Part shown: piece after piece, positions 8,719 to 43,753 of the stretch
Layout: every line of letters starts with the position of its first letter
Numbering within the stretch: position 1 is the stretch's first letter
Assembly: GCA_965113315.1 (NCBI GenBank)
Contig: OZ220365.1
DNA length: 64,000 nt
Direction: 5' to 3' (one strand)
Origin: Podarcis vaucheri
Lineage: Eukaryota
The notes under the pieces: model-generated
The model's database searches: none
Seen by the model: only the letters and a program-made list of their open reading frames with translations
What the model was told of the DNA's origin: nothing
Program-made: the position numbers and the translations under genes

Positions 8719-10610
8719 TTCAAAACGTGTCCTACAACCCTGGTAATGCCTACCACACAAAAGTAAACTTTGCATTAGCTTGCCCTGCCCACTTTTGTCT
8801 CTCAGCCCACCTACCATTGGGCATGTGGCCCTCAGAAGCTTGCACAGAAGGGAATGTGGCCCTTGGGTTCCACACCTCTGCTCCAGAACACGGGTTTTGG
8901 CTACGTGAGCAGTGAGTGGCACACACACCTGAACATCAGAAACAGAGGGAATTAATATCTGCTGCAGGCACCCATTTCAGGAAATTCTCAGAGCAAATGC
9001 TTCACTAGTAAATGGATCTGGGTCAGCTGCTGCTTCCAGTGAAAAGAGCATGGTGACGCATGCGGGGAGCTCTGGACAAATGGCTCGCTGGCACTTATGT
9101 CTCACTGCAGAGTGAAAGCACTCATGCAGTTGCCAGATTTTAAAACAGAACTTTGTTGCCATGGCAACTTTGTGTACATCTGTGCCTAGGCCTGTGGAAA
9201 GGGGTGGGTGTATAATGGCTAGGATTCTGAATTCCTTTTTTAAAAAGTCTATTATATTATGCATATTGGAGAACACTGTGTTAAGTTTGGTAGCTGGGTT
9301 ATAAAGAAATTATGTGAGAAAATTCTATGCCTATGCTGGGACTTTTAGCGCAAGCTGAAGGAGTCCCAGTGCAACATAGGAAGCTCTCTCATACTGACTT
9401 AGATCCCCTTTCTTGCTATAGCACTTCACAAAGTGGATGGGGGGGGGATCACTTCTGTAGGGTTAACCCCGCAGAAGTACCATCTGATAGTCTGCAAGGA
9501 ACTACTGTCATATTAAGCTGCAGGAGTCCCAGTGCAACATAGAAAGCTGCTTTATACTGCCTTGCTCGATATTGCCCCCATTGACTGGCAGTAGCTCTTC
9601 AGGGCTTCAAACCAGGAATATTCCCAGCTCTATCTGGAGACGCTGGGACCTTTTGTATGTAAAGTGAGTGCTCTGCAACGGAGCTATGGTCCTTCATGTA
9701 CTTGTTCACATGCTCCTGTTCACACCCTCCTACTTGGAGGAGGGTGAGACAGGAGGGCTCACTTGTATCTCCTTGCATCATTCTAAATGAAAACTATTTT
9801 AAAATCCATCTGTGGAATCCTAACAGCCTATGGTAGTGCTTCTGCTCAAACAGTCCGTGTTCTGCTTCCTGTGCCCAACAAAACTTTATATAGAAATCCA
9901 CTTCCGGTATGACAGGAGGAGCTGCTGTTCGAGTGAGAGCTCTGGAATGATTATATAGCTATGTGCCCAGGAACTGCACATTATATTTTCTTGGTTTCTT
10001 AGGCTGCTTTCACACGAACCCACACTGACATCCTTCATTCACTTTTTATGGGGCATCCAGACAGCATCATTGTCAGCCTGTTGCATTTCAGTGTTTTCTG
10101 TTAGCATCTAATGTTTTTTGAGACCTGAGTTGCATTTTATTTTGTTTCGGTTTTTGCAGTAAAGCAGCAGCCTGTCTACTTTGGAGATGCAAGGCATTAA
10201 TGAAGCTTTTCAAAGGCTCTTGTGCCTTTTAACTGAAACATTTCCTCCTTGTAAATTCAGTCTGTTTTTATTGCTTCCTGATAAATACAGGTGGGGGATT
10301 GGTGATAACTAGCCTATGTTAATTGCCCTTTCTTAATTATACCTGTGTCAGTTTCTATTCCTGTGTGTAGAGAAAGCTTTAATTATTCATTTTACCTCAT
10401 TTGTTATTTGCTATTAATAGTCCCTTTTCCTGCGAAAAAGAAATATGGCTTAATTATGCTTAATCCAATCACTACCTGCAGTCCATTATTTTTTTCAGTT
10501 CAGGGGCACATTTGGAATTCTGGCACCACAGAATATGCATTTCACAAAAGAAAAACTGGTGATGTTCAGAACCAGCCCACAAACACACAAAAAGGCATCA
10601 AGATCTACTA

Positions 10611-11727
10611 CAGGGGTGCCCAAACTTTTTTCAAGGAGGGCCAGATTTGATGAAGTGAAGGGCCGTGAGGGCCAACCAAAGTTGTTGCGCTTTTTTTAGG
10701 ATTGAAATTGTTGAGCTTTTTTTTTTTTAGGGTTGAAGTTGTTGAGGGGTTTTTTGAGGATTTTACCCCATAAACTGCTGAAGGGGCCGGATTAGGCCCC
10801 CGAAATGGACTTTGGACATGTCTGTGGTAGAGCCTTTGGCCAACAAGGGAATCAAAGGTGGGAAAGGAGATTGCAGAGGAGCTGAACAGATTATTTGCAT
10901 CTGTCTTCAGAGCAGAAGACTCGCGAGTAACATAAAAGTAATAAGGAGAGATGCGAGCCGGGAAGGGCCCGGCCGGGCGGCGACTCACCTCGCAGGCGGT
11001 GCACCATCCCTTTGGCCCAGGCGAGGCGGCGGCGGCTGCTCAGCGACCTCCTTGCCCGTCTCCTCGTGAGGGAAACGCGGCGTCAGGGCGCCTCCGGCGG
11101 AGCAAGGCCGCTGGCCTGCCTTCCCCTCCGCCTTCCTCCTTTTCGCCGCGCCACCTGCACCTCCGCTGCCTCCCGCTCTCGGCGGGCCCTCCCGGGTGTC
11201 GGGCTCCGAGGGCGAAGGCACCCCACTCCACCACGCCCATCTGCAGCACGGCCCCCGCCGCCACGCTCCCGCCAGCCGCCCTGGCCGCTTCGCCCGCCTC
11301 GGGCTCGAAGCCCGGGTTGTCCCGGCTCCAGGCCTGCCTTGAGCAAGACGAGAGCGGCGGCAACGGCGAGCAAGACGAAGGAGGAGGAAAAGAAGAAGAA
11401 GCGGCGGCGGCGACTCCGCCGCTGCCCGGCGGGTCCCGCAGCCGCCCCAGCTCCAGATGCTCCAGGCCGCCGGGAGGGCAAAGTCCCGCTATGGCCCCCC
11501 GACCCTGGACGAAGGCCGCCGCCGCCTCATAAATTTTCACTCAGGCCGGCCAAGTAACGGCGCGGGAAGGGAGCGCCTTCGCTTTCTCCACCGTCCGCCT
11601 TCCAGCCCCCCAGCCCCGCCCACAGCGCACTGCCTCGCAGGGGGAAGCGGGCTGGCAGCTACACGGGCCACATGACGAGGTCTGGCGGGCCGGATTTGGC
11701 CCGCGGGCCTTGTGTCTGACACCCGTG
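10611..11727. mobile_element. Composite hAT (Charlie-like) element carrying a captured PKD2 5' fragment
   Basis: Perfect TSD ATCTACTA (10603-10610, 11728-11735); ends CAGGGGTG / CACCCGTG; hAT subterminal GGGCCGGAT.TGGCCC motifs; additional internal right end finishing at 10824. Confidence 0.88.
10989..11530 (-). pseudogene. PKD2: Transposon-captured, frameshifted copy of polycystin-2 exon 1
   Basis: PPLSSCSRQAWSRDNPGFE at 11360-11304, upstream GLC..GLE...RDPP, and LAWAKGMVHRLRG|GTGAGT phase-1 donor at 10989/10988 (human as recalled: RVAWAERLVRGLRG|). The segments lie in different frames. Confidence 0.88.
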
Positions 11728-12129
11728 ATCTACTACTACCCTACCAACCAATATAAACAGACTAAAAGGGAGGCAACCCTCCCCCAAACCCTCATTTTGG
11801 TGGGTGGGCAAGTTGCCTTGGTAGGTGCTGCATTGGGGACATCAGGCTTAAATTAGTGTTTTTAAAATGGACAGTGCAATTTTATGCATGTCTGCTCAGA
11901 AGTAAGTTGGTGGCAGTTGAATGGAAGCAGAAAGAGGATGGTTGAGTAAAAGCTCTTTCATTAGATAATGAAGAACATTATGATTATATTGTCCACTTTA
12001 ACTTGTGCCTCTTCAGGTGCAACTGTTAAATCATTTTGTCATGTCAGAAGTGCACCAGCAAAGTTTACTCTTATTTCCCTTTCTTGCTATAATGACTTAA
12101 ATAAATCCTTTCATGCTGTTTCTTGGAAG

Positions 12130-43601: not shown

Positions 43602-43753
43602 NNNNNNNNNNNNNNNNNNNNNNNNNNNNNNNNNNNNNNNNNNNNNNNNNNNNNNNNNNNNNNNNNNNNNNNNNNNNNNNNNNNNNNNNNNNNNNNNNNN
43701 NNNNNNNNNNNNNNNNNNNNNNNNNNNNNNNNNNNNNNNNNNNNNNNNNNNNN
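43602..43753. other. Assembly gap (152 N)
   Basis: run of N starting 7 bp into intron 16. Confidence 0.99.

What the first reader, a model, noticed from the sequence alone, without database searches (positions are those of the whole stretch)
10783..10832. Internal second hAT right end points to a composite-transposition capture mechanism
Seen: after the left end comes a complete right end (GGGCCGGATTAGGCCC...ACTTTGGACATGTCTG, ending 10824), which alone would close a 214-bp MITE. It is followed by TGGTAGAG (reverse complement CTCTACCA, resembling the Charlie NTCTAGAN target), then the PKD2 cargo, then a different right end (about 11650-11727). Only the outer ends carry the TSD. Inference: a MITE sat about 165 bp into PKD2 intron 1, and transposase paired its left end with a second right end upstream of exon 1. 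This would mobilise the DNA between them, like a bacterial composite transposon.
Basis: partly seen in the sequence, partly recalled or inferred. Interest (0 to 1): 0.85.

Follow-up and report, generated by a model that had tools for sequence, protein, structure and literature searches.

The report
Three-ended lizard hAT transposon carrying PKD2 exon 1
A small lizard DNA transposon keeps a complete but skipped right end inside it, so it last moved using a second right end further on and took a decayed copy of the PKD2 promoter and first exon with it; this way of moving is known in maize, and where the arrangement first arose could not be tested.

Summary
10611-10824 is a complete copy of an abundant hAT MITE, here called family A. 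Reads from two related lizards and contigs from the window's species stop matching at 10611 and at 10824. This was seen in hundreds of reads and more than 100 contigs. Their flanks are heterogeneous, with consensus CTCTAGAG. The outer right end (about 11654-11727) belongs to a second family, B. Only the outer ends carry the 8-bp duplication ATCTACTA.

The cargo is PKD2 exon 1 on the minus strand (10989-11492), 164 bp past its splice donor and about 150 bp upstream. It is decayed and present in roughly 6-12 copies per genome.

The last move therefore paired the left end of A with the right end of B and skipped A's own right end. This resembles a maize Ac/Ds macrotransposon.

Three facts weaken it:
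- The DNA next to the inner end looks like a LINE fragment, not the PKD2 CpG island.
- The CpG island starts abruptly near 10926.
- The B end is only a 75-88 bp stub.

The scan's first readers noted similar "Pack-hAT" elements elsewhere in this genome; those notes are unchecked. Verdict: real, a new variant of a known kind, moderately interesting.

The parts
10603..10610 (.). Left copy of the 8-bp target-site duplication, ATCTACTA
   Evidence: Read directly. Identical to 11728-11735. It has the TCTA core of the family target CTCTAGAG.
10611..10824 (+). Complete 214-bp hAT MITE (family A). Left inverted repeat at 10611-10630. Left subterminal motif GGGCCAGATTTG at 10638-10649. Three T-rich 26-31 bp tandem units at 10679-10754.
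   Evidence: depth is about 1900 at 10611-10660 in X23, against 0-2 for the unique flank. Heterogeneous loose ends lie exactly before 10611 and behind 10824. (D2, D3) shows the internal tandem units.
10784..10824 (+). Inner, skipped right end of family A. Palindrome GGGCCGGATTAGGCCC at 10784-10799, 25 nt from the tip; tip ...GGACATGTCTG. Position 10821 is T here but C in about 92% of family reads.
   Evidence: (D9); 598/511 reads and 145/132 contigs end their match at 10824. At 10821, T>C in 354/386 and 345/373 reads of X23.
10825..10832 (.). TGGTAGAG, a target-like octamer abutting the inner end. Presumed right copy of the duplication made when MITE A inserted at the donor site.
   Evidence: It matches the family target CTCTAGAG at 5 of 8 positions. 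Only 2.7% of window octamers do as well. Not duplicated to the left of 10611.
10826..10925 (+). CpG-poor piece that reads like a LINE ORF2 linker fragment (...KEIAEELNRLFASVFRAED) on the plus strand, antisense to PKD2. It is either resident in PKD2 intron 1 or separate filler DNA.
   Evidence: depth about 45-57 at 10861-10910 against about 10 beside it; about half the reads carry 11 extra letters after 10853. GC 0.485, CpG observed/expected 0.37. The LINE identity rests on my recollection of CR1-type ORF2 motifs; Pfam and the Atlas gave nothing.
10926..10988 (-). First 63 bp of PKD2 intron 1, with splice donor GT at 10988-10987; start of the CpG island
   Evidence: GAG|GTGAGT read on the minus strand. 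CpG observed/expected 1.22. Read-through ORFs of other squamates also continue ...RLRGESP.
10989..11492 (-). Decayed copy of the PKD2 exon 1 coding part (residues 1-183). The start codon reads ATA (11492-11490), and there are at least 4 frame changes relative to lacertid PKD2.
   Evidence: PDB polycystin-2 E = 1.6e-8. tblastn of P0036 (Podarcis raffonei polycystin-2) E = 4e-72, split over three frames. At 11490, T>C (giving ATG) in all reads of X23 and X24.
11493..11640 (-). About 150 bp upstream of the PKD2 start codon (5' UTR or promoter part of the CpG island)
   Evidence: Contiguous with exon 1. GC 0.70, CpG observed/expected 0.94. Read depth matches the rest of the cargo. The role is inferred.
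11641..11727 (+). Outer right end: a 75-88 bp stub of a second MITE family (B). Firm family homology starts at 11654. Palindrome GGGCCGGATTTGGCCC at 11687-11702, again 25 nt from the tip; tip ...GTGTCTGACACCCGTG.
   Evidence: depth about 390 at 11661-11710 (X23). The loose end before 11654 is seen in 200 reads with agreement 0.91 (GAGAATAAAAGGTGAAGGCTGGCGGCCGGC), which is family B's own interior and unlike the cargo. (D9).
11728..11735 (.). Right copy of the 8-bp target-site duplication, ATCTACTA
   Evidence: Read directly.

Best explanation
The 1117-bp unit 10611-11727 is a three-ended, non-autonomous hAT element.
- It consists of a complete family-A MITE, about 820 bp of carried DNA, and the terminal 75-88 bp of a sister family B.
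- The carried DNA is a LINE-like piece, the first 63 bp of PKD2 intron 1, PKD2 exon 1 and about 150 bp upstream.
- It entered this site as one piece.

Shown:
- The 8-bp duplication flanks only the outer ends.
- The inner end at 10824 is a true family end.

Inferred mechanism:
- A hAT transposase supplied in trans bound the left end of A.
- It paired that end with the next compatible right end downstream, the B stub, instead of A's own right end.
- A's right-hand flank was therefore cut out and moved with it. This is the logic of a maize Ac/Ds macrotransposon or a bacterial composite transposon.
- Both right ends carry the same palindrome, GGGCCGGATTWGGCCC, exactly 25 nt from the tip. That fits one transposase serving both.
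- The octamer TGGTAGAG after the inner end is the leftover half of A's own target duplication at the donor site.
- After this, the unit multiplied to roughly 6-12 copies.

Where the donor arrangement arose is open. I put the odds as follows.
- About 45%: MITE A had inserted into an existing family-B element. That element's interior had already been replaced by mosaic filler DNA (a LINE piece plus the PKD2 5' region).
- The rest: direct template switching from A's flank.
For: - TSD ATCTACTA is 8/8 identical at the outer ends only.
- 10611 and 10824 are family ends, with heterogeneous flanks and target consensus CTCTAGAG.
- The octamer after 10824 matches that target at 5 of 8 positions, p about 0.027.
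- The outer end is a distinct, abundant family whose usual interior differs from the cargo before 11654.
- The same palindrome sits 25 nt from both right tips.
- The cargo is PKD2 exon 1 with its donor and upstream DNA in native order. No other PKD2 exon lies in the window.
- Cargo depth averages about 12 in X23 and about 8.5 in X24, against 0-2 for the unique flanks. Cargo contigs run at 6-13 times the unique contig depth and are 96-98% identical.
- Precedents: maize macrotransposons that excise and reinsert (PMC9910405; PMC3260210).
- For a mosaic donor: there is an abrupt change from CpG-poor, LINE-like DNA to CpG island near 10926, and the B end is only a stub. Filler DNA made of transposon pieces is reported in Anolis hobo elements (PMC3014272) and in the maize compound element Ds-l4-483 (PMC3260210).
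Against: - No native PKD2 locus and no other full copy of the element could be read, so the donor arrangement is inferred from one copy.
- No read or contig shown spans the inner end into the cargo or spans the whole element.
- The right host flank (11761-11860) has no depth in X15 or X16. The tool warns that such a hole proves nothing.
- The target match of TGGTAGAG is modest.
- The copy number is estimated from about 1.3x read sampling and from contig word depths, which the tool says are not copy numbers.
- The LINE identity of 10826-10925 rests on read depth and on my memory of the motif.
- No autonomous transposase was identified.
Confidence: 0.62

Rival explanations
1. MITE A sat 164 bp into intron 1 of the functional PKD2 gene, and a family-B right end sat about 150 bp upstream of the start codon. 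Transposase paired the two and moved the native promoter and exon 1 segment. The gene was restored by repair from the sister chromatid or homologue.
For: - The cargo is one colinear piece of PKD2, from upstream DNA to intron.
- A target-like octamer follows the inner end.
- Unchecked first-reader notes in the same genome report hAT MITE pairs bracketing a CpG-island promoter and several CpG-island cargos. That would fit a preference for inserting at the 5' ends of genes.
Against: - The 100 bp next to the inner end are CpG-poor, repeated about 40 times and LINE-like in the opposite sense.
- No LINE 3' part lies between that piece and the exon, so an extra deletion 63 bp into the intron is needed.
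- The B end is a stub that breaks from B's interior at 11641-11654, so a second deletion or a solo end is needed.
- The native locus was never seen.
Confidence: 0.27
2. Pure repair-type capture, by the Pack-TIR gap-filling or fork-stalling and template-switching route. Synthesis primed at or near a MITE copied a LINE piece, then PKD2, then a B end, by successive template switches. The inner right end is simply part of the template, and no pre-existing pair of ends flanked the cargo in the genome. The product then transposed.
For: - The cargo is a mosaic with abrupt composition breaks.
- The sequence GGCTGGC is shared by the cargo side and B's interior at the 11641-11654 junction, which could be microhomology.
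- This is the route proposed for multicopy Pack-TIRs in animals (PMC8277862).
- The maize compound element Ds-l4-483 has the same order: whole element, retroelement piece, gene piece, truncated end (PMC3260210).
Against: - The inner end is complete to its last base and is followed by a target-like octamer. That looks like an ordinary insertion junction rather than a switch point.
- In the maize compound element the same TSD recurs after the inner end; here it does not.
- The final move still needs the left end of A paired with the right end of B, so this rival differs only in how the donor was built.
Confidence: 0.2
3. Two separate events in place. An older element carrying PKD2 inserted here, and MITE A later landed beside or inside it, so the unit never moved as a whole. 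Alternatively, the structure is an assembly join within repeats.
For: - MITE A is very abundant, so nested hits are common.
- No record spans the whole element, and the right flank is not covered in X15 or X16.
Against: - A nested insertion would leave TGGTAGAG on both sides of A and an older left end beyond it. Instead A's left tip directly abuts ATCTACTA, the same octamer that follows the B tip.
- An independent 1.8-kb contig joins the unique left flank to A's first 30 bases with 0 mismatches.
Confidence: 0.04

Closest known systems
Maize Ac/Ds macrotransposons and alternative transposition (Huang and Dooner 2008; Wang et al. 2022, as cited in PMC9910405 and PMC3260210)
   Same: - The 5' end of one hAT element and the 3' end of a second, often fractured, element in direct orientation act as one transposon.
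- Everything between them is carried along, including skipped inner ends.
- An 8-bp TSD is made at the new site, and the copies can increase in number.
   Different: - The maize cases were shown genetically with a known transposase and known donor loci. Here the event is inferred from a single insertion.
- The ends here come from two MITE families.
- The host is a lizard, the unit is only 1.1 kb, and the donor locus is unknown.
Pack-TIR or Pack-hAT elements of animals (Tan et al. 2021, PMC8277862)
   Same: - A non-autonomous hAT carries a host gene fragment with intron DNA between inverted-repeat ends and has a TSD.
- Multicopy cases exist, for example Pack-hAT-N8_XT, which carries a 5' UTR piece. 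That study counted 208 Pack-hAT elements in 100 animal genomes.
   Different: - The origins proposed there are gap filling inside a resident element, or fork stalling and template switching followed by transposition. No retained, complete internal end is described.
- Here the cargo lies outside a whole MITE, between its right end and a second right end.
Maize compound element Ds-l4-483 (PMC3260210)
   Same: The parts come in the same order: a whole element with perfect inverted repeats, then a retroelement ORF fragment, then a transcribed gene fragment, then a truncated element ending in a perfect inverted repeat.
   Different: - In maize the truncated end is a duplicate of the first element, and the same TSD recurs after the inner end.
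- Here the outer end is from a different family, and the octamer after the inner end differs from the outer TSD.
Filler DNA in Anolis hobo-type hAT elements (Novick et al., PMC3014272)
   Same: In a squamate genome, hAT elements take up foreign DNA that often contains pieces of other transposons.
   Different: That paper does not report a gene promoter or exon as cargo, a three-ended structure, or end by-pass.
Bacterial composite transposons (for example Tn10, Tn5)
   Same: Two insertion elements flank a segment, and the outer ends are used together, so the segment moves.
   Different: The transposase family is different, both flanking elements are whole, and the system is prokaryotic. This is an analogy only.

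Membership tests
hAT (Charlie-like) non-autonomous element / MITE | 8-bp target-site duplication | tested here: met
   ATCTACTA at 10603-10610 and at 11728-11735.
hAT (Charlie-like) non-autonomous element / MITE | Short terminal inverted repeats beginning CA(G) | tested here: met
   Left end of A: CAGGGGTGCCCAAAC. Reverse complement of A's right end: CAGACATGTCCAAAG (13 of 20 identical). Reverse complement of B's right end: CACGGGTGTCAGACAC.
hAT (Charlie-like) non-autonomous element / MITE | Palindromic target preference nTCTAGAn | tested here: met
   The consensus of hundreds of heterogeneous flanks is ...CTCTAGAG before 10611 and C/GTCTAG(A/G)G after 10824.
hAT (Charlie-like) non-autonomous element / MITE | Many dispersed copies with the same two ends | tested here: met
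   Read depth is 500-1900 across the MITE, against 0-2 for the unique flank. Loose ends fall exactly at both ends in four runs.
hAT (Charlie-like) non-autonomous element / MITE | A matching autonomous hAT transposase in the genome | not tested
   There is none in the window, and the rest of the genome could not be searched.
Pack-TIR (Pack-hAT) | Host gene fragment, copied as genomic DNA, between transposon ends with a TSD | tested here: met
   PKD2 exon 1 with its splice donor and upstream DNA lies between A's left end and B's right end, flanked by a TSD.
Pack-TIR (Pack-hAT) | The parent gene lies elsewhere and stays intact | tested here: inconclusive
   The copy here is decayed (ATA start codon, frame changes) and no other PKD2 exon lies in the window. 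Related lacertids have a full PKD2 of 952 aa. The parent locus in this genome was not seen.
hAT macrotransposon / composite element | The outer ends belong to two different element copies in direct orientation, with a skipped inner end between them | tested here: met
   Left end and inner right end from family A, outer right end from family B, all in one orientation.
hAT macrotransposon / composite element | TSD at the outer ends only | tested here: met
   The octamer after the inner end is TGGTAGAG, not ATCTACTA.
hAT macrotransposon / composite element | A donor locus where the two elements flank the same segment | not testable with these tools
The junction ORF search was blank. The metagenome scan gave only chance 20-mers.
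Compound Ds-l4-type element | The same TSD is repeated after the inner complete element | tested here: not met
   TGGTAGAG against ATCTACTA.

The most novel reading that the evidence does not exclude
In lacertid lizards, abundant hAT MITEs may routinely move the DNA next to them. The transposase would skip a MITE's own right end and use the next compatible right end downstream. Because these MITEs would tend to land at the 5' ends of genes, this would repeatedly pick up CpG-island promoters with first exons and spread them as multicopy cassettes. The PKD2 element would be one such case that still keeps the skipped end. That would be a transposition-dependent capture route in vertebrates, distinct from the gap-filling and template-switching routes proposed so far.
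Probability: 0.25. Interest if true: 0.7.

Novelty: new variant of a known kind. Interest (0 to 1): 0.5.

Why it matters
How cut-and-paste transposons pick up host gene fragments is still argued. In animals, only repair-type routes have been proposed (PMC8277862). An element that still holds a complete, skipped end next to its cargo is a structural record of a different route, in which two ends from different elements are paired. That route has been shown genetically only in maize.

If the same three-ended layout recurs in this genome with other CpG-island cargos, as unchecked first-reader notes suggest, lacertid genomes would let this route be tested by simple genome-wide comparison. It would also show promoter and first-exon cassettes being scattered into other genes' introns.

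Tried and rejected
- **Junction ORF search.** A protein search with the ORF that runs from the intron across the inner end into the MITE (window:10611-10988:-, region 1-70) found no candidate. This says nothing either way.
- **Metagenome scan.** A scan for a 20-mer across the exon 1/intron 1 boundary gave two contigs that match the window over only 20-21 bases. They are chance hits and were discarded.
- **LINE-like piece.** Pfam and the ESM Atlas gave nothing usable. A paper search for the motif gave nothing.
- **Window search.** No other copy of MITE A, the B end or the cargo lies in the 64-kb window.
- **Single-strand folding.** Folding the MITE as single-stranded DNA gave no signal, z = -0.31.
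- **Earlier findings.** A look-up by sequence was blank.
- **Nested insertion in place.** Rejected because A's left tip abuts the outer TSD and TGGTAGAG is not duplicated.
- **Native PKD2 locus as the window itself.** Rejected because the exon is decayed, is flanked by transposon ends with a TSD, and is multicopy, and because no other PKD2 exon is present.
- **Not done.** The N run at 43602-43753 was left untouched.

Full report
**What is in the sequence**

Reading 10300-12100 gives the following layout.
- Host DNA ends in ATCTACTA (10603-10610).
- A left hAT-type end begins at 10611 (CAGGGGTGCCCAAAC).
- A right end finishes at 10824 (...GGACTTTGGACATGTCTG).
- The octamer TGGTAGAG follows at 10825-10832.
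- A GC-rich block comes next.
- A second right end finishes at 11727 (...GTGTCTGACACCCGTG).
- ATCTACTA appears again at 11728-11735.

The 8-bp duplication therefore brackets 10611-11727 (1117 bp), and TGGTAGAG is not repeated to the left of 10611. Both right ends carry the palindrome GGGCCGGATTWGGCCC, at 10784-10799 and 11687-11702. In each case it lies exactly 25 nt from the tip. The left end has the related motif GGGCCAGATTTG, 27 nt in from its tip. No other copy of any part lies in the 64-kb window.

**Is the inner end a real end?**

Yes. I laid contigs of the window's species and raw reads of two related species on 10411-11910.
- X15 and X16 are contigs of the window's species. One 1.8-kb contig matches 10411-10640 without a mismatch.
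- X23 and X24 are raw whole-genome reads of the two related species, sampled at about 1.3x.

Read depth jumps from 0-2 in the unique flank to about 1900 at 10611-10660 and to 290-950 over the rest of the MITE.
- Reads stop matching exactly before 10611: 916 and 876 reads, and 128 and 117 contigs.
- Reads stop matching exactly after 10824: 598 and 511 reads, and 145 and 132 contigs.
- The unmatched parts agree with each other only 0.34-0.37, so they come from many different loci.
- Their consensus ends ...CTCTAGAG on the left and begins C/GTCTAG(A/G)G on the right. That is the palindromic target typical of Charlie-like hAT elements.

So 10611-10824 is a complete member of a family with roughly 700-1500 copies.

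**The outer end**

Depth at 11661-11710 is about 390 in X23. In 200 reads the sequence before 11654 is a well-conserved interior (agreement 0.91, GAGAATAAAAGGTGAAGGCTGGCGGCCGGC), and it is unlike the cargo. The outer end is therefore the terminal 75-88 bp of a second family, B, cut off from its usual interior. Homology could reach 11641 if two small gaps are allowed. The shared GGCTGGC there could equally be microhomology.

**The cargo**

On the minus strand, the ORF 11040-11540 matches the N-terminus of polycystin-2 in the PDB with E = 1.6e-8. The stretch PPLSSCSRQAWSRDNPGFE is identical.

The closest full-length relative found is Podarcis raffonei polycystin-2 (P0036).
- Its residues 1-183, which make up exon 1, align to 10989-11492 with E = 4e-72.
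- The alignment is split over three reading frames.
- The start codon reads ATA in this copy. All reads of X23 and X24 have the letter that gives ATG (11490 T>C).
- Several short stretches present in other copies are missing here (table 4).
- The exon ends at GAG|GTGAGT, with the donor at 10988-10987.
- No other PKD2 exon is in the window.

This is a decayed copy of the 5' end of a lacertid PKD2, taken as genomic DNA. It is not the gene itself.

**The cargo is multicopy**

- Raw-read depth over 10911-11610 averages about 12 in X23 and about 8.5 in X24, against 0-2 for the unique flanks.
- The cargo contigs of X15 and X16 have word depths 6-13 times that of the unique flank contig. They are 96-98% identical to the window.
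- I read this as roughly 6-12 copies per genome in three species labels. Sampling is thin, and the tool warns that summed contig depth is not a copy number.
- A 94-aa "hypothetical protein" of Podarcis lilfordi (P0001) is 84% identical to the cargo by tblastn (80-87% by the measures) and differs from P. raffonei PKD2. It may be a gene model placed on another copy.

**The DNA next to the inner end**

The 164 bp between the donor and 10825 are not uniform.
- 10926-10988 is CpG-island-like (GC 0.59, CpG observed/expected 1.22).
- 10825-10925 is CpG-poor (GC 0.485, observed/expected 0.37).
- Depth at 10861-10910 is about 45-57, so that part is a separate repeat of some 40 copies.
- On the plus strand, antisense to PKD2, it reads ...KEIAEELNRLFASVFRAED. 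From memory, this matches the linker region of CR1-type LINE ORF2. Neither Pfam nor the Atlas confirmed it.
- About half of the reads crossing 10853 carry 11 extra letters there.
- If it is a LINE piece, its 3' continuation is missing. Only 63 bp of CpG island separate it from the exon.

So PKD2 homology is certain only from the intron's first 63 bp onward. The piece could still be a remnant resident in the native intron.

**How it most likely works**

Because the duplication sits only at the outer ends, the last transposition used the left end of A and the right end of B, and it skipped a complete right end of A. Three observations fit this.
- The octamer after the skipped end matches the family target at 5 of 8 positions, including TAGAG. 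Only 2.7% of window octamers do as well. This fits an ordinary insertion junction: MITE A had once inserted into that DNA, and its right-hand flank was later carried along.
- The two right ends share the same palindrome at the same distance from the tip, which fits one transposase recognising both.
- The inner tip differs from the family consensus at its fourth base (10821 is T; about 92% of family reads have C). This might have weakened that end. It is an idea only, and its timing is unknown.

This is the logic of maize Ac/Ds macrotransposons, where ends of two linked elements move the DNA between them and can multiply (PMC9910405; PMC3260210).

**Where the donor arrangement arose**

I could not fetch that locus.
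- The junction ORF search was blank.
- The metagenome scan gave only chance 20-mers.

Two features need extra deletions under the native-gene model: the B end is a stub, and the LINE-like piece is truncated 63 bp from the exon. Both are expected if the PKD2 piece first became filler DNA inside a family-B element.
- Transposon-rich filler is reported in Anolis hobo elements (PMC3014272).
- The maize compound element Ds-l4-483 has the same order of parts (PMC3260210).
- Pack-TIRs of animals are thought to arise by gap filling or template switching (PMC8277862).

MITE A would then have inserted into that filler and taken over as the left end. My odds are about 45% for this hybrid origin, 25-30% for the native-gene origin, and about 20% for direct template switching. 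All three need the same final step, pairing A's left end with B's right end.

**Comparison with what is known, and novelty**

[quoted passage not shown] Tan et al. counted 208 Pack-hAT elements in 100 animal genomes, including a multicopy frog element carrying a 5' UTR piece (PMC8277862).
- End pairing between two hAT elements is known in maize.
- I found no vertebrate example of a captured gene fragment that still has the complete skipped end beside it. My literature search was limited.
- I therefore class this as a new variant of a known kind.
- First-stage notes on other windows of this genome describe further "Pack-hAT" elements with CpG-island cargo and a second 3' end. I could not read those stretches and use the notes only as leads.

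**Limits**

- Only one copy was read in full.
- Only the left host junction has independent contig support.
- No record spans the element.
- The right flank at 11761-11860 is uncovered in X15 and X16. The tool says a hole proves nothing.
- The host gene was not checked.
- Run and species names were coded. The protein matches point to a lacertid lizard, probably Podarcis or a close relative.

Noticed in passing
window 11490-11492: The PKD2 start codon reads ATA in this copy. All X23 and X24 reads, and a minority of X16 contig depth, have the letter that gives ATG. Most contig depth in the window's species shares ATA, which hints at a lineage-specific burst from an ATA-bearing copy.
   Followed up: partly
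window 10911-11610: The PKD2 cargo is multicopy: about 6-12 copies judged from read depth and contig word depth, in three species labels. The PKD2-carrying element is therefore a small family, not a single insertion.
   Followed up: partly
P0001 (Podarcis lilfordi, 94 aa, 'hypothetical predicted protein'): It is 84% identical to the cargo's exon 1 translation by tblastn (80-87%), has an intact ATG, and differs from P. raffonei PKD2. It is probably a gene model placed on another copy of this element in a related species.
   Followed up: no
window 10805-10841: One contig each in X15 and X16, at 5-6 times unique depth, joins 10805 to 10841 with CAGA in between. It therefore lacks the inner right tip and the first 16 bp of cargo. 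Only 20 letters lie on the shorter side. This could be a subfamily whose inner end is deleted, or a chance split alignment.
   Followed up: no
window 10821: The fourth base of the inner right end's tip is T here, while about 92% of family reads have C. The skipped end is slightly off the family consensus.
   Followed up: no
window 10511-10610 and 11871-11910: The host flanks hold other repeats. Depth is about 25 at 10511-10610. Depth is about 115 from 11871 on, with heterogeneous loose ends before 11871.
   Followed up: no
window 11761-11860: No contig of X15 or X16 and almost no raw read covers this right flank, although the left flank is covered. The tool warns that filters can make such holes.
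   Followed up: no
window 10679-10754: The MITE interior holds three tandem T-rich units of 26-31 bp (AAGTTGTTGAGCTTTTTTT...). Read joints show many family members with this part shortened or skipped.
   Followed up: no
window 43602-43753: A run of 152 N, either an assembly gap or a masked stretch.
   Followed up: no
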